Shown here piece after piece: positions 12,521 through 58,746 of a DNA stretch of 64,000 bases. Where the stretch lies: contig NC_087258.1 of the NCBI RefSeq assembly GCF_037042905.1, forward strand, positions 2,604,001 to 2,668,000, written 5' to 3'. Positions within the stretch are counted from its first letter, which is position 1, and every line of letters begins with the position of its first letter. A model generated the notes under the pieces. That model searched no databases. It was not told the origin of the DNA and was given only the letters and a program-made list of their open reading frames with translations. Made by a program: the position numbers and the translations under genes. The stretch comes from Lytechinus pictus (lineage: Eukaryota).

Positions 12521-12769
12521 CAGACCTCTTAATATGCAGGACCTTCCTGAAATGATAGAGTCAGCAACCTGTCCATCAAGGACCGAGTTTCCTCCAGCTC
12601 CTTGTGGGCTTGGCTTGCAGGCTTCACAAGTACATACATGTACATGTACCTCAAGTTTTTGACTTGTGTTTATTTTTAACGGATATGCCCCAGAACGACT
12701 AGCCCCATATATTCACTTTCTACAAGTTCCCTGAAATCTCTCTACAATAATTGTTGGAAAAATGACTTT

Positions 12770-13105
12770 TGTTATCATCTATACAGTATTTTTGTTATCA
12801 TCTAGATATCTTTCATATGTAAATACTATTAACTTTTGTTAAATTGTTATGTAGTCATTGTTTATATATATATATTACAGAGTATATTTAGTAGACTCAC
12901 GATTGTTCATTCTTAACTAACAAGTTAAGAAACATGTTTCTATCTATCTAGACTAGAAGGGGCCAGACTTGACTAGCTTTCATGCTATTTTCTGGTTCCT
13001 ATTATCCTTGCTTTTCTATGTATTCATAACTGATTGTCTGTAAACTTGTAAATTGGTATTATCATTGCGTTGGATAATAAATAAATTCATTCATTCATTC
13101 ATTAT
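12770..13105 (+). mobile_element. Probable LINE (CR1/L2-like) 3' end
   Basis: Stem-loop-like 3' segment followed by AATAAATAAA(TTCA)n tail. Confidence 0.45.
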
Positions 13106-38010: not shown

Positions 38011-39784
38011 CTGGAAGGGATGAGGGTAGTAAAGAGGTGGGATAAGAGGGTCGATAGGGGATAGGAAGTGAGGTGAAGGGGGTGGAAAAGGGTAAGGAGG
38101 CATGAAGGGGGGATAAAAAGGGGCAAGTGTTTTAATTGGGTAAACATTAATGGGATGCATGAAAGAATAAAAAGGAACAGCGAGGAAGAGTGTAGTAGAG
38201 AGGAGTGAGAAGGGGGTCAATAGGGGATAGGAACGGGTGAAGAGTGAATGAAGGGGGGAGGGGAGGGAGAGGGAATGAAGGGGAAAGAAGGGTGTGAATG
38301 GGGAATGAAATGGGGGTGTGGTGTTTGAATTGGATATACATAGAATGAGATACGTAAATAAAAACAAGTTATAAAGGAATAGTGAGGAACAGTTTAGAGA
38401 TATGGGACAGAACAGGGATGGGGGAGCGAGGGAGAAGTGAAAAGAGAAATAGATGGAGAGGGGGGTAGGGTAGTCATAAGCAAACAAATGAAAAATTAAT
38501 ATATGAAAAGGAAGAAGTACATGTGGGGGAAAAAGTATAGAAAAAGAAACCATGGGGGAGGGGTAGAGGAGTAAACGAAGATGCCGAGAACAACAGTGGG
38601 ATGGTGCAAGATGGTGAGTACATAAAGAGACATGAACAGAATGACAGACACAAAGGAAAGATGTCATACAAAGAATATATGATAAACAACAAGGAAAGAG
38701 AGACAGACATACACAGTATTTTGACAATGATACAATTCACCATTACAATTACACAGAAGACAAAGGCATGAGTGAGCGATGCAACATAGACAATAGAAAG
38801 TGAAAGAGGAAAAAATAACAATATGGAAATATATTTTTAGTCTCAACTTCAAATGAACAGAATTTATAGCATTCTCACTGAAACCTGATACATGCTGTTC
38901 AAAATCAATTTTACAAAAACTGTTGCATTACTTTTACTCTACTAGGTCAATTTACAAATTACTGAGGCTGATCAGCATCACTACTACAGAAAGATATATG
39001 CATGTAATAATGTACATGCCTTTCTGCAAACTAATTCCCCAAACCTTTTTAAACGTTCTTCTCCAATTGCAGTATCAAGGTACCAGAGTGTTCTTTTCTC
39101 ATATAAGGATAACTCTCTTCTATTTCTGTCAAACATTGTTCCATCTTCTCCTTGATACCATTTATTTCTGCAACAGCTAATATGTACTATCTTTATGAAT
39201 AGACAAGCCCTCCCTCATGTATCCATCGTTCTTTATTTCATTATCCTTTGTGATCTCTAGAAATTCATGGAAATGCATAAATTGGTGTCGCAGCAGTTCT
39301 GTAAGTCATCAGAACTATTTCTCAAACTATTCTATCACCTACCTTTTCTTTCATCTTTCCTTCAGTCCTTTGGCCTATTTTTTCTCAACAAGTATCTTTT
39401 ACTCAATTCAAATGCCTTGATTCTATACTACTCTCAGATCAAGAATTGTTTGTACGCTATTCGCATATCATCACTTTGTCTCTCGTTCACTTTTCATTAC
39501 TCTTCCATACAGTTACCTTTCTCTATCTCTTTCTAGATATCAATATATGTAACTTGATTTTGTAGGCATTCTTTCAGTTGAAAGGACCAATCTCTAATGA
39601 CTTCATCTCATATCTTATCATTTCCCTTTCCTTTCAACAATCTTTCAGTCCCCTACCTTCTTTCCATCTATTCTTTGATGTAAATGCCCTGATGCTGAAG
39701 CAGTTCTTTCTGCGCAAAGGACCAATCTCTTATGATTTTCTCTCGTAACCCGACTTTCCTATCAACTATCTTCCATTTTCTTAC

Positions 39785-40034
39785 CTTCTCTCCATCTCTT
39801 CTTTGATATCAATGCCCTGATGCTGAAGCAGTTCTTTCTGCGCAAAGGACCAATCTCTGCTGTCCTGCTGATCAGGCTTGCCTTCCGTATCGCCACCATC
39901 GCCTTGCCCTCTCGTATCCTGGACCCCTTCTAGGACCTGCCCTTGGACGGAAGATGAAAGCTCCCTCTGTTGTCTGATCTGTTCTGGATTGGTGAAGCGG
40001 AACACGTGGTGCTTCCCGAGAATGATGCGGTAAC
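39785..40034 (-). CDS. KIF1A/B (unc-104): Exon 8: FHA end and CC2 start ([18 protein letters not shown]...[23 protein letters not shown])
   Basis: ttacag|...AG|gtaaga; 250 nt, phase 1-2. Confidence 0.96.
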
Positions 40035-40241
40035 CTGTAAAAAAAGATATAACAAAGATGTCTTTGATGAACGTCCTGGAGAAAGGCTAATATTTCCCCC
40101 ATGAAACATCAAAATTACTACAAATTGTCCATTTGACATACTATTAAATGTATGGTTTCATTGTTTCACCCGATAGTTACTTCTGCTCTGAAAATACATG
40201 AAATGTGTAAGGTTGGTGATGATGGATTGGAGTGAGTCATA

Positions 40242-45166: not shown

Positions 45167-45355
<189 letters not shown>

Positions 45356-46905
45356 TTAATTAACTATGCTAGTCCCAAATTGACCAAAGAGCTATCAATC
45401 TTCAGGGGGGAGAGGGGAGGGGGTGTTAGGCCTGGACCTCGAGGCCCTGTTGCAATCTTGAAGGGAAAGTTTTAGGGAAAAGGGTACCCATGTTTTAAGA
45501 AATTTGTCAAATCATAGACAATGTTTGGGGGGTGAAAAGGGGATATCAAAATTAGTTCCCCTAAAGAAAATACAGTCCATCAATTCACAAAGATCTTTGT
45601 TTGGCACACGGCTTTATGAAATAATAAAATATTACAATCCAAAATGACTTCTAAATCATAATTCAATCATGTAAAGTTAAAGTTTGCAGTGCAGACAATA
45701 AGCAGTTTGACAGGAAGTATATTTTTGTCACAATAGTCTGTGTAATTACAAATATAGTCACATGCTATTGCATATTAAAAGCAAATAATAATAAAAACTG
45801 TTGATACTTCAGTCATTCATAAAGCCATTTATAACTTTATATCCTCAATTGGTTGATTACATATACATGTACAGTATATGTACTTGGCTGCTACATGAAT
45901 ACTGAATGTCTGTAAATATTTACAAAGCAAACAGTAACCAATCAATGGCATAATCTTTTGATTTCATTTGCATTCATGCATCATACAGTGTCCCATGCAA
46001 TGCTTTCATTCAACAAGCTTTATGCAAGAATGACATTGATTTATTTGGAAATCAATCTAAAAATCTCAAAATTAGCACATAAGCCTACACGTAGATTGAG
46101 GCAAGAACCTCAACAAACTGAATTTAGGCTCAAATTTTATTTCCTTCTGATGCATTTTGTTTGACAGGTGAGAACAGTACAGCTATGTTATAAAAATATA
46201 TTAAGCATCAGCAAGCTCAGCTTGTTTCATTACATACGTGTACCATTCAAAGCTCCATTTACATCTAGTAAAAAGCTAAATTACAATAATTGAGTATTAT
46301 CAATGTAACAGGATTGAACATAAAACATAAATAATTACTATTTAGGCTCATTTTTTCAGGATATGCAGGCTGTTACGTGCATATTTACATGTAGAAGCCA
46401 TATTCAAAGGCAGGGCAACATGCAATAATGTAATGAGTGCATTGAGAAGACATCACGCAGGAATTACATGCTCACTTTAACATCTTCAGCCAACCTGCCT
46501 GATAAAGCGGCGGAATTGGTTACATTCATAGCATTGACAAACACTAGGAGCAGCTAATAATGTCTGCATGCCCTAACACTGCAATGCAGGTACATGTACA
46601 TGTACATATACATGTACATGTAGTTGGCTTATCGGCTCAAGCACAGTACTGCATGTACTCAGTAGTATATATATGCCCCGTTCTACCGACAAAAACACAC
46701 ACATGCAGTATACATTAATCTGATCATCCATGCTTCATTCATGCATGCACTGTGGTGTGTTGATAGCATCATTATGGAGAAAGCGGTGTGAAAACCAATT
46801 AACTAAAACAGTCATAATTTTCTAAAAGCTTGAAAAACATGATGATGATGATGATATCATTCAGGTTAAATCTGTTTGCAGCAGATATTTAAATGCAAAT
46901 TAGTA

Positions 46906-47748
46906 GGGGAAGGCGGGGTAAGTTGTGACACTTTTATCATTTTGCATATTAGAATTGATATGACTAATAATATTGAAGTATTACCTTGTCTTTAAATTTG
47001 ATTCTTTGATTTCATTTTTCACATATATATATAACTTTCTAACCCCACACTGAAAGTCATTGTGACCTTTGAAAAAAATTGATGTCAAATGGCTCAACTT
47101 GCCCCATCTGTGGGGTAAGTTGTGCCACCTTCTGGGGCAAGTTGAGCCACAAAAACTGTACAAAATGTATGCGGGAAGAGCATGTCAATTTTTTTATTTA
47201 AAGTCTTTTCACTTGCTTACTAACATCCTCTAAAAGTAAAAGAACTGTCATGTGAATTTGCTCCTTTCTGCCTGCATATCAATGGCTTTTTAAGGTTTTT
47301 TTTTTTTTTTAATTATAAATTACCATAAGAATTACCATGGCTCAACTTACCCCATGCTGGCTGGCTCAAATTACCCCAGTCCGAACTTAATGTGATATTT
47401 TCACATCCACACATTTCTTATGCATCCATCGTGTAAAAGACCATGACAAGAATGAGAATCCATACCTGGACTAACAATATTGTTCTTATTTCTTTATTAT
47501 ATTTAAAGATGTGTGTAGGTTAAAAGCACTTATCATTTCACACCCTTTTTTACTTTTTTTGGCTGAAATTTGTATTTTTCCCTCTAAAAAAGTACTTTTT
47601 GTTTCAAAGTTGAAAACAATGTGGTGGGGTTAAGGGTTATGTAATGTGTCATCAATACATGACACCACCACATTGTCTGACTCATTCATTATTGGCCTGG
47701 GGGTGGTGGCTCAACTTGCCCCTATGCTCAACTTACCCCACCTTCCCC
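46906..47748. mobile_element. Non-autonomous DNA transposon with TA TSD (Tc1/mariner-like)
   Basis: TIR GGGGAAGG(C/T)GGGGTAAGTTG; internal CTCAACTTRCCCC repeats; TA on both flanks. Confidence 0.8.
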
Positions 47749-48766
47749 TAGATGAATTGTTTTGTTTTTTATTTTCTATTTCAATAAAGGTCAGATTGTC
47801 AAGATTCAAAAAATGTGTTTATTGTTGGGGTATGAGCAAGGGCGCCAGAAGGGGAATACAGGTGGGGTGTGGGGGGGGGGGCAAAAATGCATTTTTCGAT
47901 ACACCCCTGTAGGTTGCACATCGTGTACACCTTGTATGCTTTTGTTTCATATTCAGAAGCTCAAAATATATACTTGGTTTTAATACAAAAAATATCAATA
48001 ATTGAAAAATAATATATAACATCAATAATGGGATCACTTGATAACATTGATCACAGTCTCCATATTCACAAATCTCAATATTTGATTCTGATTGGTTGAT
48101 GGTGGGTGTTTTGAACAAAACACATATGCAACAATGAACCTGATTGGTCAGTGCCATTTTGTGACTGATTACAATCCTTGGTGATACAGGGTCCCAGCAT
48201 ACTCTGATGCTGAACTTTTTCCCCCCCTTACACAGGCCCCTACATGTCTGCATCATTCAAACTCACAAAGAGCGGAGTCAAAATCATAACATATGGAACA
48301 CGACAGGCATACTGCTAAAGGCCCTTGCTTTATGGGAGTATTTGAAAGGGTAATGAATACATTATAGGGTATTTATGGGACTAATTTTGAATCGTGGGGA
48401 TAATGATAAAGGACAGAAAACATGATGATGAATAAGAGGAAGGAAAGAGATGGTGAGAGAGTGAAAGGGGAGAGCAGATAGAAAGAAGAGAAGAGAGAAT
48501 TTGACAGAGAAAAAAAATGAGGGGGAGAGGATGAGTATAGTAAATGAGAGAGGAGAGAAGAGAATGAGCAAACAAGAGTAAAGGAAGAGATGGAGAGAGA
48601 ACAACAGAAAAGAGAGAAGGAAAGAGAGCGAGAAAAGCAGACAAACAGAGACAGATAAAGAAAGAGTAAGATAAGAAGAGAATAATGGAGGTATATAATT
48701 TCTTTTTTTAAAAGGCAAGAAAATGGTGAGACATTGAAATTAAACAAAATAATAAGGTTAGGTTAA

Positions 48767-49451
48767 CAATTCTAAATTCCAAGGATTTAAAATAAATCCA
48801 GATCAGATGTGAATAGTGACCAGCCAAATATTAGATTTAGATTTGAATATAAATCTAAGGTCTCACAGGCCTAATTCATTCCCCATAGACTCGTGTGTTG
48901 AATTGGCACTTTAAAAAATTCATAAAAAATAAGGATGAAATTCGGGGGTCGAATGTTTACTACCAGTGGATAGGATATATATCTGGCAATCCATATCTGA
49001 CCAGAAAAGGGTCCCTCGACCGGCTCATTTTAAAAATAAATTGGCGTGTTTGAAGACACCGTCGGGGGGAGCAGATTCATCACCTCAAACGGCAAAATAG
49101 CCCTAATCCTTCCGCCAGTCAAAATATAGTCCAAAATTGGTGATATTTCTTCCCAATTTGGGACAAGCAAGTTCAGTAATTACCAAAAATAGAATCAGTG
49201 TTAGATGGACAATCATATGCATACACTTTGTCAATCAGCCATATCAAAATAAAAAAAATAGCAATGGGTTGGCTCGAATGAATATCTCTTGCTTTCCCAA
49301 TGTTAATAGGCCCGTGAGGCCCTAAGAGATTTGAATTTAAATCTTTTGAGATTTAAAAGTTAATCCTTAAGATTTAAAAGAAATTAAAAATTCAGCTGGT
49401 CACTATTCACACCCGATCTGGATTTAATTTAAATCCTTGGAATTTAGAGTG
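48767..49451. mobile_element. TIR element with a nested MITE (48859-49322)
   Basis: Outer TIR of about 55 bp TCTAAATTCCAAGGATTTAAA...GAATAGTGACCAGC; inner TIR GG(T/C)CTCAC(A/G)GGCCTA flanked by TAA; related fragment at 58470-58620. Confidence 0.8.
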
Positions 49452-51480
49452 TACATGCAGGGATGCATGCTGTGGATCTGAGGCCTATTCTCTAAATCTA
49501 ATAAGCTAATCAAATTCATGAATTCAAATAAAAGAAAAACGTAATTCATATTCTTCCCCAGGCAAAGTTAGTATAACCAATACTCTCCTCTTGGGGAATA
49601 AATTTATACTCTCATCTTTGCTCGGGTGTTACACCTTGTATCTAATTCTTAAAAACTTTAAAGGTCAGCTCAGAAAATAGAAAGATATTAGGGTTGTGAC
49701 ATTTGATGCAACCTCCCTTTGGCAAAGACCTTTCGAACAATATTATTCTTTAAAAAGGTTATTAGTGCAAATTTAAACAAGTTAGCCCCCCCCCCCAAAA
49801 AAAAGAGAAAATATCTCATATCATTTATCAGGATTCCTGATTTACTGCAATCATTATAACATACATGTATAGCTTATGACATCATACATGTAATAAAACA
49901 ATGATGGTGTCACAAGTTTTTCTGCAGTTTTGGACCACTTTTGCGACGTGAAGCATATCATAATGCATTTTTTAAAAACATTATCATTGTGATAATGTAT
50001 GTTTTCTTTTATGTCACCGAGTTGTTAGTTTGTTCTGTTTTTTTATTAATATCTTACTTATAGAGGCTCTACTAGTTTCATATCTTCATGAGATATGCTT
50101 CCAATGAAATGATAGTCTTTTATCCATTCTCTTCAAAACTATACTATTAATATGCCCTATCAACATACAGTAACCTGGTATAATATAAATATAAAAGCAT
50201 GGTTAAAGATGCATTCGTCATCAATGCAGCATACTGTACATGTACATCATGTCCAAGCTTCCAAAAACTAACAATGAGAGTAATAATTAATTTCGACTAT
50301 AAATGAAAAATTCAAATTTGATTAAGTTTTTGTATACATGGAAAACTCAGGTTTTAAATCAAAATCCAGAGTTCTCAAAGTGAAGTTGAAAATTAATGAT
50401 TTCTCAGAGCATTCTAGATGTTCGAATCCATTCTAAGCCCATTATGATTGTTTTACACGTCCTTAAAACCTTCAAAGGTGAATTCTAATAGGAAAATATT
50501 CAGCATTTTTTTCACATGTTTCTCACTAAAATCTGCAGGCGTTTTCAAAACATGGATAATCAGGATTAACTGAAAACTGCAAGCATTTTCAAACATGAAC
50601 ATCAAATGTTGGGAGGTCATTCGGTATTATAGACACACGATCAACATCAAAGGAAATGATGAACACTGTTGATATTTTCCCTCAAATATTGCCTGAATTC
50701 GACCCTTAAAAATTTCACTCCAGCAAGGCCTACTCAATTCCTGTCGATTCTAAAAAAATGAATAAAGGCGACAGTATTTTCGTGTTACTTCTGATTTTTA
50801 AAGTCAAAACTAATTTTAATGCACTGTGGTGCAATAGTCACAAGAGTCTAGACAGAAACGTGTGAAGAACCTACATGTACGTAATTCCAACCAGACGAAC
50901 TAAACCAATTTATCTTGCCTTATTAATATAGCTAGTCGAAATCACATCCCTTCCTGGTGAAGGAAGCTCTTAGCTAAGCAATGACATTACATGCATCACA
51001 ACACATAGCAATGATAGAGCTGCCTCATTTCAATAGACTTCATACAAGAAATGCATTCTGATTGTAGGTATCAGCCCAAAAGTGTTCAATCATATAGGAT
51101 GATATACTACACTAAGTAGAGCTACATGTATGGCACTTACATACTACATCAATTTCTTTAAAAGCTTACAAAGGACATACGCTGTATATACTTTTTATGT
51201 TTTTAAAATTTTATTCTAAATTTGCTATTTTCATGATTTAGATAAATCAGCAATTGAAATAAATACAAAAATGGGGGATGTTGGACACACAAAATTATAT
51301 GTATACATATCATGAAAACAACCTGTACACAGAAGGCCTACTATTGACAGCTATAGTTTTACATTAATATTATACTATAGAAAACATTGCACAAATGTCA
51401 CAAATTCATGCATTCACAATAAAAATGCAAATTTCTATACAAAAACAAAATATAAAACTATTGAATGTTATTTCTCTCAC

Positions 51481-51501
51481 CTTGTCAATGGGCATACTTG
51501 A
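51481..51501 (-). CDS. KIF1A/B (unc-104): Candidate 21-nt alternative microexon (SSMPIDK) in motor loop 12 (K-loop)
   Basis: TACTAAC branch point, pyrimidine tract, caatag|TCAAGTATGCCCATTGACAAG|gtgag; phase 0-0 like the flanking exons; TGCATG about 70 nt downstream. Confidence 0.7.
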
Positions 51502-51998
51502 CTATTGGTGTGACAGTGTTAGTAGCAGAAGGAAATTAAAAGGGATTAGAGCAAAATTGGTTAGTTATAAATTATAAACAGAAAGATAGAAACTGCATAG
51601 TCTCTTTCAGCAAGTGGATTTAACTCTAAAATAGCATTAGACAGGATTTGACTCCACTTGAGTCAAGTTAGTAGTTTCTTCGTTGAGCTTTCATTTGACT
51701 AGAATCTATTTTCAGCTGATGCAAACTACATGTATTCCATTCCAAGAATCCCATTTCAGCCTAATATATAAGTACACAAAGGGAGATGAATAAGCCCAAC
51801 TGCCATGACTTTTAAAAAGACGCCTCAGTGTATTTATCAGACAAACACATCAGGTGGGATCATACTCAGCACCTTTTCCTTTGTAATTCTCCCATTTCAG
51901 CATTGACAAGATAATGGGAATGCACTGGGTAATTCTTGGCCCAAATGATAGTGACTTTTGATAAGATGCTGCAGCAGATGTATTAGTGGCCACACCTG

Positions 51999-52209
51999 GG
52001 GGGTGTTTCACAAAGATTTAAGTATGACTTAGAGTCGCACTTAAATGTCTATTTGCGCACGGTATAAAAGGCATGACAGCATTGGTCAGATTATGCCAAG
52101 AAGACGCGCTCTACTGCGTATTGTCCAATAAGATTGCGCGTTGCATATCATGTGCGCATCGGCATTTAAGTGCGACTTAAGTCATACTTAAATCTTTGTG
52201 AAACACCCC
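51999..52209. mobile_element. Young MITE with near-perfect TIRs of about 50 bp
   Basis: GGGGGTGTTTCACAAAGATTTAAGTATGACTT / AAGTCATACTTAAATCTTTGTGAAACACCCC; CTG/CAG flanks. Confidence 0.88.
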
Positions 52210-53354
52210 CAGGTGCAATCCTACTCGGCGTCTTTTTCTTTACACTTCAGCATAGACAAAACAATGGGCGACTGGGACACTGCTAGGAAATTCTGTATTC
52301 AGTAAGGCAATGACAAGACTCTGGATTGAACATCACAGTTCATAAGATGGCCACATCAGGTGAAATCCTATTCAGTGCATTTCCCTTTGCAATTCTCCCA
52401 TTCCAGCAGATAAATAAAATGGGGGACCCATGTACACTGCTTGAAAATTCTGCATGCAGACAAGACTTGCAATCGATGCCTCAGTGTATTCATCAGGTGG
52501 CCATAATAGGTTGTCTCCTGCTCTGCATCTTTTACCTCGTGATTTCTGCCTCTAGATGAAGAAATGGAAAAGATGCTGGGGAAATCCTGCATGCAGTAAA
52601 CCTTTACTTTTCAATAGGACCCTCAGTGTATTCATCAGGCACCCATATCAGCATCGTTTCCTTCCCAATTCTACCATACCAACATAGACTCACAAAAAAC
52701 CCCAATGGGGAATTGAAAAAAAAAACACTGGAGGAATCATGCAAGAGGCAGCTGCCATTAACAATTTAACATCATTATTAATGCCAGGGTAAAAGTATTG
52801 TCCATTTTGGGATAGGTGTATATGATTGACTTTAAGTCCGTCGACAAAACAACTCCCAAAGAGAGAAAACATTATTCCAGAGGGGAGGAATCCTACAACC
52901 ATTGCACAAGCAATGTGTACAAATTCAAAAAGTTTTCATTTCACAACTACAATTCATTCAGTTTATAATACAAAGCCCAGATCAACAAGCAATGTCCTGA
53001 ATGAATGTTTTTAGCTGTTCCTTGAAGAACATTACGGGGCAGTGTAGTCAGCCATGCTGGAGAATGAAGCAGAAGAAACAAGCACATAACTTATCATAAA
53101 CATGAGGGAGGTGAAACAAGAGACAGGAACGTCCAATATTGGCAAGTGTGAGCGGAAGCTGGCCATCGAGGGCCTCCTTGACGTGACTCAGAAAATGACA
53201 GAGGGTAATTAAAGATACCAACATGACCTAGCTCCAGGGGAAAACAGATAATATGGGTGGGAGCTAGGTGGTAAACAGGATGAGAAACCAGTAAGAAAAA
53301 TATGAGTAAGAGTCAGATGGAGAAGGAGATACAGATGGGTAAAACTAGCAGGTG

Positions 53355-54690
53355 GAGATGTAGAAGTAGTAGATGTAGAAGTAGTAGATGTAGAAGTAGT
53401 AGATGTAGAAGTAGAAGATGTAGGAGTAGTAGATGTAGAAGTAATAAATGTAGAAGTAGTAGATGTAGAAGTAGTAGATGCAGAAACAGTAGATGTAGAA
53501 GTAGTAGATGCAGAAGTAGTAGATGTAGAAGCAGTAGATGTAGAAGTAGTAGATGTAGGGGTAGTAGATGAAGAAGCAGTAGATGTAGAAGTAGTAGATG
53601 TAGAAGTAGTAGATGTAGAAGTAGTGGATAGAAGTAGATGTAGAAGTAGTAGATGTAGAAGTACATGTAGAAGTAGTAGATGTAGAAGTAGTGGATAGAA
53701 GTAGATGTAGAAGTAGTAGATGTAGAAGTACATGTAGATGTAGAAATAGATTTAGATATATAAGTAGTAGATGTAGAAGTAGATGTAGAAGAAAAAGATG
53801 TAGAAGTATTAGATGTAGGAGTAGTAGTAGTAGATGTAGAAGTAGTAGATGTAGTAGTAGTAGATGTAGAAGTAGTAGATGTAGAAGTAGTAGATGTAGT
53901 AGTAGTAGATGTAGAAGTAGTAGATGTAGTAGTAGTAGATGTAGTAGTAGTAGATGTAGAAGTAGTAGATGAAGAAATAGTAGATGTACTAGTAGTAGAT
54001 GTAGTAGTAGTAGATGTAGTAGTAGTAGATGTAGAAGTAGTAGATGAAGAAATAGTAGATGTAGTAGTAGTAGATGTAGTAGTAGTAGATGTAGAAGTAG
54101 TAGATGTAGTAGTAGTAGATGTAGTAGTAGTAGATGTAGAAGTAGTAGATGTAGTAGTAGTAGATGTAGTAGTAGTAGATGTAGAAGTAGTAGATGTAGT
54201 AGTAGTAGATGTAGTAGTAGTAGATGTAGAAGTAGTAGATGAAGAAATAGTAGATGTAGTAGTAGTAGATGTAGTAGTAGTAGATGTAGAAGTAGTAGAT
54301 GTAGAAGTAGTAGATGTAGTAGTAGTAGATGAAGAAGTAGTAGATGTAGTAGTAGTAGATGTAGAAGTATAGTAAATGTAGAAGTAGTAGATGTAGAAAT
54401 GGTTGGGGGTTGAAGTAGTAGATGTAAAAGTAGTAGAGTAGTAGATGTAGAAATAGATGTAGCAGTAAATGTAAAAAAAAATAGATGTAGAAGTAGATGT
54501 AGATGTATCAGATGTAGGAGTAGTGGTAGTAGATGTAGAAGTAGTAGATGTAGAAGTAGTAGATGTAGAAGTAGTAGATATAGAAATAGTATGGAGAAGT
54601 AGTAGGTGTAAATTAGAAGCAGTATATATGAAGAAGTAGTAGATGCAGAAGAAGTAGATGTAGAAGTAGTAGATGTAGAAGTAGTAGACA
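53355..54690. repeat. 15-bp minisatellite (AGAAGTAGTAGATGT)n / (AGTAGTAGTAGATGT)n
   Basis: About 1.3 kb tandem array, visible directly; source of the spurious LHLLL/STSTT/RCRSS ORFs. Confidence 0.97.
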
Positions 54691-55748
54691 GATTGAGTAT
54701 ATGAGGTAGATATACAGAATGTATAAAAAGGAAGTAGATGTAGAATTCCATAGCAAATCTATTAGAAAAAAGGAGTTGTAAAATCAGATGTTCAAGTGAA
54801 AGATAGAGAAGCAGTAGATGTAATAAATTCAGAAATATTAAATGCATCAAAGAAAAGTAGACAGCGTAGATTTTTATCACCTTTACCCCCCCCCCCCTCT
54901 CTCTCTCTTTCGTTCTTTCTTTCCCTCGTGCACTATCTCTGTTGAGCTCTAAGCAGCCACGATCCCTAATATAAGCTTTGTAAACAAGATGAAACAATCT
55001 GGAAGGTTTGATTATCATATTGAACCAAGCCTGACAGGGGAGGCTGATCCACAGTGGGACGCCGATGCGCTGGAAAACAAGTGAAACCACATCTCAAAGC
55101 AAAATGTCAATACGTTCAAATAGAGGCAGCAAATTCAATCTGTTGAGAACCTGAGAGTGAGCTGGGTGTGGGAGAGTGATGCAGAAATGTGAATTATATT
55201 CCAATGGGAGTGGGAGTGAGTAAAAGATAGCATGAGAGAGTGAGAGAAAGTGAGAGAGACAGACAGATTACAGAAAGAGAGAGAGAGACAGATGGAACAA
55301 AGAAAGGAAAAGAAAGGCAGTAAATTCAATCTGTTGAGAACGTGATAGTAAGCTGGGTGTGGGGGAGTGATGGAAAATCTGAATTATATTACAAAGGGAG
55401 TGGTAATGAGTGAAAGAGGAAGAGAGCAAAATAGTCAGATAGATAAATAGATAGACAGACAGACAGACAGACAGATAGATAGTTAGCAATAATTAACAAC
55501 AGATAATAATAAGATGTTGTTACAGCTCATAACAAAGACATCAATCAGGAATTGTGACAAAAGGGATGGAAAACAGCAGAGAATAAAGACCGATAGAGAT
55601 TTGAAAAAATGAAATAAGATAATGGTAGAGAGACAGTTCACTCCCACATATAGTTTGGTTGATAAATAAACATTATACATTTTTAATTAAATATACATTA
55701 AGAAAAAAGATTCTGGATTCTCCCAAAGATACATGTATAATACAAATA

Positions 55749-56158: not shown

Positions 56159-58099
56159 CAAATATTGTTTCATAAAGGTGTCCATAAATTCTGCGCGACT
56201 TTATGAACGAGTGGTGCCCTTTCCATGACAAGCTTTATCAGATTTCTAATCATTTTTGTTTCAATCACCTACAGATAAAATCCAATCTTTGTAGATTAAA
56301 TTAATCATTGTTAGTATATGTATGGAAAATTCAATATTTTTCATGAATTTGATTAGGATTATACAGGATTTCCGGGAGGGGGGATTGAAGTATTTGATTA
56401 GTAGCAATCCATAATACATGACAATATCATCATGAAGTGACTATGTGATCAATAATACACCAAAAATAATGAGATGCTCTTTTCCCTCTGAGAACATTAC
56501 AAAAGGAGTGGGCTATAATGATCTAAAATTAAATCTAATTTTAGGTGTGATAGTTGTAACAAAGCACGATTTCAGAGAAAGAGTAATGCGTTTGTTTTGA
56601 GCTATCATTTGGTGTACTAGAATAGGAAAGGGTCATGTAATATAGTGCCGAGAAGAGGAGTGTTGGCAAAGAGACAAAAACCTAGAAAAATATAAGAAAG
56701 GAGAATTCTTAAACTTGAAGGTAACCTGCATCAGAAAGAAAGGAAGTTAATTTTTCATGCACTGCTGTAATGCATGATAGTTTCTTGAAAACAAGAATAT
56801 GGTGTTAAGTGGAAGTATCAGAAATAAGGAAAAAATAGAACTTCAACATATAAAGATACTTTAAATCTGCTTTATCAGCTTTAAGTCTTAAAAGTCTTAA
56901 AATCTCAGTTTCATAGAGAGTTTACAGGGACCACCTTATTCATATATTTTTTTCCCGTCAAATTTTGTTGCATTCAGATGCATCAACAAGTTTCCACTGA
57001 GATATCATTATATCCCAATTGCCTTCTTTACATTTGAAAGGTTAACCAAATATTGTTAAACATGTATCATATCAATTATAAGACCTCATAATGACACAAC
57101 AATATCCAGGAAGTGAGCTCCACAATTTGCATCTTTCTTCTAATAATTGGAAATAAAGAATTATACAGTTTAAAAACAATGTACATCTACACTACAGACA
57201 GGAAAAAAGAAGTGAACTATCTGAGACAAGTTTTTTTTTAAATATTGAAATATCATTAAATACAAAGAAAATGATTAGGGTTTCATTAGGTTATATAGAC
57301 AGATTCTGACCCAGTCTTACAAGTCGGGCATGAAGAAAGCTCGAGGTTTTCCCTTGGACTTGCTGTCCATCATGCAGTAGGTGAAGTTATATATTATGAT
57401 TTTAAATACTACTCTCCAGCATTGCTCTAAGTGAACTACTTTAATATAGTAATGTTAGAATAATGTGCAAAGGATTCCGAGAAGAAATTAAATGGCATGC
57501 CGTTCTGAAGAATATATTTTGATGAAATGCAAGATGCAGAGAATTCATTTTGGTCTTACATTTTTTATGTTTCTTGGTTTCCCTGATTGTGATGACTAAA
57601 GAAATTACAAACAAAAACAACAACATGAAAACAAACATAAACATTGAAATAATATTTGACATAACCAAAACGGTGCTGGGGGGATAAGTACATTTTCACT
57701 CAATTTACCTAGTTTCATTTTTATATTTAACTTGGATTTTTTAATCATCTCTTTTATTAATGATATACAAGAGAAGTGATAATTCACTATAGGCAAGCAC
57801 ACATCACTATGCTTTTCTCCTTAGCAATAAAGATTTTTGAATAAGTGATTCAAGCTCATCGGGGAATTGTATGAATTAATATTATCACATACTCTTCATG
57901 ATATGAAATCAAACATATTACAGATGAAAGGGAAAACGACACAATCACAAAGACTTCAAAGAACAAAACTGAGAAAAACTTACGTTAAAACAAAACCTTG
58001 CCAATTAGCATTAAAACATGAAAACTTCAGCATAGAAAATTTAGCATCAGTTGACTTGAACTCTGTGGTCCCAAGAGATAAAAGTTTGAATACAATTTA

Positions 58100-58680: not shown

Positions 58681-58746
58681 AAGTTCTGCTAATGCTGAAA
58701 TAACTTTTCCCAAGGTGGTCAGAGATTTGTTGATGTTTGCTCCTTC
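58681..58746 (-). CDS. KIF1A/B (unc-104): Kinesin-3 exon 1 in window: motor helix a4 (EGANINKSLTTLGKVISALAEL)
   Basis: cacacag|...|gtgag; 66 nt, phase 0-0; hallmark kinesin motif NINKSL; not in the ORF track. Confidence 0.96.

What the first reader, a model, noticed from the sequence alone, without database searches (positions are those of the whole stretch)
51481..51501. Candidate neural-type microexon inserting SSMPIDK just before the K-loop lysines
Seen: in the 13.4-kb intron between ALAEL and [10 protein letters not shown] lies a 21-nt phase 0-0 exon with a perfect TACTAAC branch point (51518-51524), upstream TGC motifs in a pyrimidine tract, an AG|gtgag donor, and TGCATG at 51407-51412 downstream. 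Known: loop 12 controls kinesin-3 microtubule landing and processivity; vertebrate KIF1B has a short alternative insert at this position; UGC and UGCAUG are SRRM3/4-type and RBFOX motifs. Inference: a conserved or convergent microexon tuning motor-microtubule affinity.
Basis: partly seen in the sequence, partly recalled or inferred. Interest (0 to 1): 0.7.

Follow-up and report, generated by a model that had tools for sequence, protein, structure and literature searches.

The report
Unverified K-loop microexon candidate in urchin kinesin-3
A 21-base stretch inside a long intron of a sea-urchin cargo-motor gene has the signals of a tiny optional exon, at a spot where fish, mammals and amphioxus do splice in such an exon, but I could not test its use in RNA and a second 36-base candidate sits in the same intron.

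Summary
On the minus strand, a 21-nt phase 0-0 open stretch (51501-51481, SSMPIDK) lies in the 13,355-nt intron between the ...ALAEL exon and the K-loop exon of a KIF1A/unc-104-type kinesin-3 gene.

It is not a trivial chance match:
- Its donor AAG|GTGAGA is the strongest in the intron.
- Its acceptor has an 89-nt AG-free zone with UACUAAC, a second CUAAC and two UGC motifs.
- The same filter found nothing in 114 kb of control sequence.
- The acceptor's pyrimidine tract is weaker than at any real exon of this gene. That fits the published code for SRRM-dependent microexons but is poor by ordinary standards.

The site is a proven hotspot. Vertebrate KIF1B inserts DNCTSK there. An amphioxus locus I fetched has a 33-nt cassette (SQSGDVKKIIK) in the same intron and phase.

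A rival 36-nt cassette (57595-57560, SSQSGKPRNIKN) has an ordinary strong acceptor and resembles the amphioxus cassette (p about 0.06).

If real, the 21-nt exon is a new member of a known kind. My odds that it is used are about 35%.

The parts
58681..58746 (-). Constitutive 66-nt exon encoding [22 protein letters not shown] (end of helix alpha4, start of loop 12). It ends in phase 0 and its donor is GTGAGT.
   Evidence: It matches KIF1A structures at E 6e-8. The amphioxus counterpart is also 66 nt (L002:12149-12214).
51481..51501 (-).
   Evidence: Single copy in the 812-Mb genome. Use in RNA was not tested.
51502..51592 (-). 3' splice region of the candidate. It holds the acceptor AG (51503-51502), an 89-nt AG-free zone, UACUAAC (51524-51518), CTAAC (51564-51560), CTAAT (51549-51545) and UGC (51527-51525, 51553-51551). 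Only 55% of positions -22 to -3 are pyrimidines.
   Evidence: The 15 confident acceptors of this gene have 60-90% pyrimidines and mostly no CTRAY.
51475..51480 (-). Donor GTGAGA after AAG. It is the highest-scoring 5' splice site in the intron.
   Evidence: score 7.9; the only AG|GTRAG in 13,355 nt.
51407..51412 (-). UGCAUG (RBFOX-type motif) 69-74 nt downstream of the donor.
   Evidence: There are 16-17 copies in the intron, so one within 100 nt is expected 12% of the time.
57560..57595 (-). Rival or additional candidate: a 36-nt phase 0-0 cassette, SSQSGKPRNIKN. Acceptor ...tttgtaatttctttAG (80% pyrimidines, 78-nt AG-free zone), donor GTAAGA. GCATG starts at 57500.
   Evidence: It is the best match among all AG/GT open frames to the amphioxus cassette SQSGDVKKIIK (score 22, shuffle p 0.06). 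Single copy. It is the only hit of the ordinary-exon filter in this intron.
45168..45325 (-). Constitutive 158-nt exon that starts in phase 0 with the K-loop lysine run.

Best explanation
The 21-nt stretch is a plausible but unproven alternative cassette microexon of the sea-urchin KIF1A/unc-104 orthologue, of the SRRM (eMIC)-dependent type.

Shown:
- It lies in the intron that splits loop 12 (the K-loop) one residue after ALAE. It is in phase 0-0 and open.
- Its donor is the best in the intron.
- Its 3' splice region has a weak pyrimidine tract, an 89-nt AG-free zone, UGC next to a perfect UACUAAC, and a second CUAAC.
- The same intron in the same phase carries real cassettes in amphioxus (33 nt) and in vertebrate KIF1B (18 nt).

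Inferred:
- In most cells the weak 3' splice site is skipped, giving ALAEL-ASKKKKK.
- In some cells, probably neurons, a factor bound at the UGC and branch-site region allows the 21-nt exon to be recognised with the help of its strong donor, giving ALAEL-SSMPIDK-ASKKKKK.
- The insert has net charge 0. It lengthens the flexible loop just ahead of the lysines that contact the tubulin tails, and so would change microtubule binding, as reported for longer KIF1B K-loop inserts.
For: - Sequence and phase.
- Donor strength: strongest donor and the only AG|GTRAG in 13.4 kb.
- AG-free zone: 89 nt, where 2.4% of intronic AGs reach that length.
- Motifs: two CTAAC, one CTAAT and two UGC inside that zone. 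The gene's 15 confident acceptors mostly have none.
- Published eMIC-exon code: weak 3' splice site, long AG-exclusion zone, UGC near the 3' splice site, strong CUAAY branch site (PMC8797185).
- Background test: the filter hit once in this intron and not at all in 114 kb of control sequence. 0 of 1000 shuffles matched it.
- Copy number: the region is single copy, while the intron contains dispersed repeats at 46902-47753 and 53314-54822.
- Hotspot: amphioxus cassette at L002:12647-12679 with the same flanking exon structure and a UGC + TACTAACTAAC upstream region. KIF1B occurs with and without DNCTSK. Mouse Kif1b 18-nt exon is eMIC-dependent and fly unc-104 has eMIC-dependent microexons.
- Intron length: at 13.4 kb this intron is far longer than its 0.5-1.5 kb neighbours.
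Against:
- A search with the included form found no protein carrying SSMPIDK. It found no urchin fragment of either form, so this says little.
- No conservation test was possible.
- SSMPIDK resembles neither DNCTSK nor SQSGDVKKIIK.
- The pyrimidine tract is the weakest of any acceptor examined in this gene.
- The weight-matrix sum ranks it only 12th of 355.
- The filter criteria were chosen after the fact.
- A better-looking 36-nt cassette lies in the same intron.
- A search for the eMIC-type factor in this genome gave no usable answer.
Confidence: 0.35

Rival explanations
1. The 21-nt stretch is a chance or decoy splice-like element. The real cassette of this intron is the 36-nt exon at 57595-57560 (SSQSGKPRNIKN), orthologous to the amphioxus SQSGDVKKIIK cassette. 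It adds three positive charges to the K-loop.
For: - Its acceptor looks like the gene's real acceptors: 80% pyrimidines, 78-nt AG-free zone. The donor is GTAAGA.
- It is the only hit of the ordinary-exon filter in the intron, against 1 hit in 114 kb of control.
- Its peptide starts with SQSG like the amphioxus cassette and ends I-K-N against I-I-K. It is the top score among 304 AG/GT open frames, shuffle p 0.06.
- KIF1A structures read ALAEMDSGPNKNK at this place, which also contains an SG.
- The region is single copy. GCATG lies about 55 nt downstream.
Against: - No RNA evidence here either.
- The peptide similarity is not significant when the whole intron is scanned in three frames (null mean 21.9 against observed 22).
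- The last exon base is T rather than G, and the donor score is moderate (2.8).
- The two cassettes are not mutually exclusive.
Confidence: 0.3
2. Neither stretch is used. The urchin K-loop is invariant (ALAEL-ASKKKKK), and both candidates are chance AG...GT frames in a long, partly repetitive intron.
For: - Hundreds of open AG/GT frames exist in the intron.
- Weight-matrix ranks are unremarkable: 8th and 12th.
- No urchin protein with an insert was seen, though no urchin protein was seen at all.
- The published view is that such exons turn over quickly between lineages.
Against: - Each candidate passes a multi-feature filter that is almost never met in control sequence from the same window.
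- The intron position is a recurrent cassette site in vertebrates and amphioxus.
- This intron is about ten times longer than its neighbours.
Confidence: 0.25
3. Both stretches are real cassettes, used separately or together (+21, +36, +57 nt), giving a graded set of K-loop lengths and charges.
For: - Both pass independent filters.
- Earlier notes of this scan, which I did not check, report several microexons in a single intron of another gene of this genome.
Against: There is no RNA evidence. It requires two unverified exons to be real.
Confidence: 0.1

Closest known systems
Vertebrate KIF1B K-loop microexon (18 nt, DNCTSK)
   Same: It is inserted between ALAE+1 residue and the lysine run, in frame. 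The mouse exon is listed as eMIC (SRRM3/4) dependent. The zebrafish exon was picked in a study that selected for neural, srrm3/4-regulated inclusion. It is reported to change motor activity (Matsushita 2009, as cited in PMC12626424).
   Different: It is 18 nt rather than 21 nt and shares no sequence beyond a terminal lysine. The vertebrate exon is documented in RNA and in knock-outs, whereas the urchin stretch is a prediction only.
Amphioxus KIF1A 33-nt K-loop cassette (SQSGDVKKIIK)
   Same: - Same intron and same phase 0-0.
- Same 66-nt upstream exon.
- The upstream region has an AG-free zone of about 62 nt with UGC and TACTAACTAAC, much like the 21-nt candidate.
   Different: - The amphioxus intron is about 670 nt, against 13.4 kb in the urchin.
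- The cassette peptide resembles the urchin 36-nt candidate, not SSMPIDK.
- The amphioxus cassette is carried by RefSeq and GenBank gene models of several Branchiostoma assemblies.
Drosophila unc-104 eMIC-dependent microexons (3 nt, and a 27-nt eMIC-sensitive exon)
   Same: It is the orthologous gene. One exon is reported to lie in the same position as a mouse Srrm3/4-regulated exon.
   Different: I could not establish which fly exon lies in the K-loop intron. The authors favour convergence over common ancestry.
eMIC/SRRM3/4-dependent neural microexons as a class
   Same: Length of 27 nt or less, frame preserving, weak 3' splice site, long AG-exclusion zone, UGC near the 3' splice site, strong branch site.
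   Different: Neural inclusion and factor dependence are untested. The nearest UGC lies 5' of the branch site, at -26.

Membership tests
Kinesin-3 K-loop (loop 12) alternative cassette | Lies in the intron that follows ALAE+1 residue, phase 0 on both sides | tested here: met
   Urchin exon borders. The amphioxus locus has the identical arrangement. The KIF1B insert falls between V and SKKKKK.
Kinesin-3 K-loop (loop 12) alternative cassette | Open, length a multiple of three, flanked by AG and GT | tested here: met
   21 nt, SSMPIDK, AG at 51503-51502, GT at 51480-51479.
Kinesin-3 K-loop (loop 12) alternative cassette | Found in mature mRNA in some tissue | not testable with these tools
Kinesin-3 K-loop (loop 12) alternative cassette | Sequence related to known inserts (orthology) | tested here: not met
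   SSMPIDK is not among the top matches to SQSGDVKKIIK. The 36-nt rival is the top match. There is no significant DNA similarity to the amphioxus cassette region.
Kinesin-3 K-loop (loop 12) alternative cassette | Conserved in related echinoderms | not tested
   No echinoderm protein or locus was returned.
eMIC (SRRM3/4)-dependent neural microexon | 27 nt or less and frame preserving | tested here: met
   21 nt, phase 0-0.
eMIC (SRRM3/4)-dependent neural microexon | Weak 3' splice site with a long AG-exclusion zone, UGC near the 3' splice site and a strong branch site | tested here: met
   Pyrimidines 55%, AG-free zone 89 nt, UGC at -26 and -52, CTAAC with branch A at -18 and -60. The code is taken from PMC8797185.
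eMIC (SRRM3/4)-dependent neural microexon | Neural-specific inclusion that depends on the eMIC factor | not testable with these tools
   No reads were laid. The PF15230 search of the urchin genome was blank, and blank in the controls too, so it says nothing.
RBFOX-enhanced exon | (U)GCAUG within about 100-200 nt downstream | tested here: inconclusive
   One TGCATG at +69 to +74. The motif occurs 1.27 times per kb in this intron, a 12% chance. The rival 36-nt candidate also has a GCATG about 55 nt downstream.

The most novel reading that the evidence does not exclude
The urchin K-loop intron carries two independent cassettes: a 36-nt exon orthologous to the amphioxus cassette and a 21-nt eMIC-type neural microexon. 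If so, splicing-based tuning of the kinesin-3 K-loop dates back at least to the deuterostome ancestor. With the fly unc-104 exon it may be bilaterian-wide. That would make it one of very few microexon sites retained across phyla, rather than a convergent hotspot.
Probability: 0.12. Interest if true: 0.6.

Novelty: new member of a known kind. Interest (0 to 1): 0.4.

Why it matters
The K-loop sets how readily kinesin-3 motors land on microtubules. It is the one place in the motor domain where vertebrates are known to use a neuron-regulated microexon.

Published work finds almost no overlap between the fly and mammal microexon programmes, and lists unc-104/KIF1 among only four shared positions. 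An echinoderm exon at the same site would help decide whether that position is inherited or a recurrent hotspot. The amphioxus cassette mapped here already extends the site beyond vertebrates.

For the urchin itself, a real cassette would give a simple experimental handle on motor tuning in a simple nervous system. As it stands, the urchin exon is a prediction.

Tried and rejected

2. The microexon and either flanking exon cannot fit in one 6,000-letter stretch (6.2 kb and 7.2 kb apart). The plan had been to read loose ends at the downstream acceptor.

4. A representative search and a homologue search with the next exon returned only exon-sized fragments from distant animals.

5. A profile search built on an amphioxus protein plus urchin exons returned amphioxus and vertebrate proteins only. 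This was useful for comparison, but gave no echinoderm.

6. Two amphioxus isoforms were not on record for locus look-up. A third worked.

7. Simple splice-site weight matrices do not separate the candidates from background. Several high scorers lie inside a dispersed repeat at 46902-47753.

8. DNA alignment of the amphioxus cassette region to the urchin intron stayed at the null level. A TTTA(C)TAACTAACCA match upstream of the 21-nt candidate is not significant.

9. The PF15230 (SRRM_C) search of the urchin genome was blank and the controls were blank too, so it is uninformative.

10. No close KIF1 paralogue exists in the genome to compare with.

11. I considered a recursive-splicing site and rejected it. 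The bases after the acceptor (TCAAGT) do not rebuild a 5' splice site.

Full report
**What is there**

The window carries much of a KIF1A/unc-104-type kinesin-3 gene on the minus strand, from the end of the motor domain into the tail. I did not check that.

- A 66-nt exon (58746-58681) encodes [22 protein letters not shown] and ends in phase 0 with donor GTGAGT. It matches KIF1A motor-domain structures at E 6e-8.
- The next constitutive exon starts at 45325 in phase 0 with the K-loop lysine run and ends at 45168.
- The intron between them is 13,355 nt. The following introns are 0.5-1.5 kb.
  - Exon and splice sites: acceptor AG 51503-51502, TCAAGTATGCCCATTGACAAG (SSMPIDK) at 51501-51481, donor GTGAGA 51480-51475.
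  - Flanking motifs: TACTAAC 51524-51518, TGC at 51527-51525 and 51553-51551, TGCATG 51412-51407.

**Is it more than chance?**

The bare pattern is not.
- The intron has 270 open AG|3n|GT frames of 9-51 nt, 17 of them 21 nt long, and 355 frames of 3-60 nt.
- With simple splice-site weight matrices the candidate ranks 12th of 355. Its donor is the best in the intron (7.9) but its acceptor scores -7.1.
- TGCATG is too common to count: 1.27 per kb, a 12% chance within 100 nt.

The combination is unusual.
- AAG|GTGAGA is the only AG|GTRAG in the intron.
- The acceptor follows an 89-nt AG-free zone, which only 2.4% of intronic AGs reach.
- That zone holds two CTAAC, one CTAAT and two UGC. The 15 confident acceptors of this gene mostly have no CTRAY at all.
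- In 1000 shuffled introns, 25% gave a strong donor with an in-frame open AG 9-30 nt upstream. 0.9% also had an AG-free zone of 60 nt or more, and none also had CTAAC.
- A filter looser than the candidate's own values hit once in this intron. It never hit the antisense strand of the whole window or the rest of the sense strand, 114 kb in all.
- The filter was defined after seeing the candidate, so these numbers overstate the case.

The stretch is single copy in the 812-Mb genome. The intron also contains a dispersed repeat (46902-47753, 40 or more copies) and a satellite-like block (53314-54822).

**What kind of splice site is it?**

Its pyrimidine content at -22 to -3 is 55%, lower than all 15 real acceptors of the gene, which range from 60 to 90%. 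As an ordinary exon it would be poor.

The published description of eMIC (SRRM3/4-type) dependent exons lists extremely weak 3' splice sites, long AG-exclusion zones, UGC near the 3' splice site and strong CUAAY branch sites (PMC8797185). The candidate fits that qualitatively.

I could not test whether the urchin has the factor. A search of the genome with PF15230 was blank, and blank in the controls too.

**The position is a proven hotspot**

- Vertebrates: the profile search returned KIF1B proteins as ALAEV-SKKKKK and, in two entries, ALAEV-DNCTSK-SKKKKK.
- Mouse: the 18-nt Kif1b exon is tabulated as eMIC-dependent.
- Zebrafish: the kif1b microexon was deleted in a study that selected exons for neural, srrm3/4-regulated inclusion. 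The deletion gave a mild social-behaviour phenotype, and the study cites altered motor activity from Matsushita 2009.
- Amphioxus: KIF1A gene models come as ALAES-SQSGSKKRKKS and, 11 residues longer, ALAES-SQSGDVKKIIK-SQSGSKKRKKS.
- Amphioxus locus: I fetched a Branchiostoma belcheri locus and mapped it.
  - The upstream exon is again 66 nt (L002:12149-12214).
  - The cassette is 33 nt (12647-12679), in phase 0-0.
  - The downstream exon starts at 12881.
  - The cassette's upstream region has an AG-free zone of about 62 nt with UGC, TACTAACTAAC and a pyrimidine tract.
- Fly: unc-104 has a 3-nt eMIC-dependent and a 27-nt eMIC-sensitive exon. One of them is said to lie at the same position as a mouse exon, and the authors favour convergence. 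I could not tell which one.

**A second candidate**

My first filter for ordinary-looking cassettes picked out a 36-nt phase 0-0 frame at 57595-57560.
- Acceptor: ...gtttttgtttgtaatttctttAG.
- Donor: GTAAGA.
- Peptide: SSQSGKPRNIKN.
- Its acceptor resembles the gene's real ones: 80% pyrimidines and a 78-nt AG-free zone.
- It is single copy.
- It is the only hit of an ordinary-exon filter in this intron, against one hit in 114 kb of control.
- Among all AG/GT open frames of the intron it is the best match to the amphioxus cassette (SQSG...I.K). Only 6% of shuffled introns reach that score.
- Scanned over the whole intron in three frames, the similarity is at the null level. It is a lead, not proof.
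- KIF1A structures read ALAEMDSGPNKNK at this place, a weak further resemblance.

**What could not be done**

There is therefore no RNA evidence for or against either candidate.
- Echinoderm comparison: none of the three homologue searches or the representative search returned an echinoderm protein. Neither annotated isoforms nor orthologous introns could be examined.

**Verdict**

The key inference, that this 21-nt stretch is used, remains open.

| Reading | Odds |
|---|---|
| 21-nt exon alone is real | 0.35 |
| 36-nt exon alone is the real cassette | 0.30 |
| Both are real | 0.10 |
| Neither is used | 0.25 |

If the 21-nt exon is real, it is a new member of a known kind. It would lengthen loop 12 by seven residues of net charge zero just before the lysines, and by analogy with KIF1B would alter microtubule binding.

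Noticed in passing
window 57560-57595 (-): A 36-nt in-frame candidate cassette (SSQSGKPRNIKN) lies in the same K-loop intron. It has an ordinary strong acceptor and an SQSG start like the amphioxus cassette.
   Followed up: partly
L002:12647-12679 and 12881 onward (Branchiostoma belcheri): The amphioxus 33-nt cassette begins TCG CAG TCT GGG and the downstream exon begins TCT CAG TCT GGC. The cassette looks like a tandem duplicate of the 5' end of the downstream exon.
   Followed up: no
window 46902-47753: An ~850-nt dispersed repeat has 40 or more copies at 87-91% identity across the genome. It carries several strong GTAAGT donor look-alikes that inflate microexon candidate lists.
   Followed up: partly
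window 53314-54822: A satellite-like block reads as a long L/H-rich mechanical ORF (581 aa). Many 72-85% identical copies occur, some in tandem arrays, on other contigs.
   Followed up: no
window 48771-48838 with 49381-49448, and 51993-52215: Short inverted-repeat matches occur within the intron. The first pair lies about 600 nt apart, and the second stretch matches its own reverse complement.
   Followed up: no
window 39656-39727 (-): A second, stop-containing copy of the [15 protein letters not shown]...MERR exon end lies about 60 nt downstream of the real exon (39784-40038). It could be a decayed tandem exon duplicate.
   Followed up: no
window 51667-51673 (-): A second TACTAAC lies 150 nt upstream of the candidate's branch site, out of only four in the 13.4-kb intron.
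   Followed up: no
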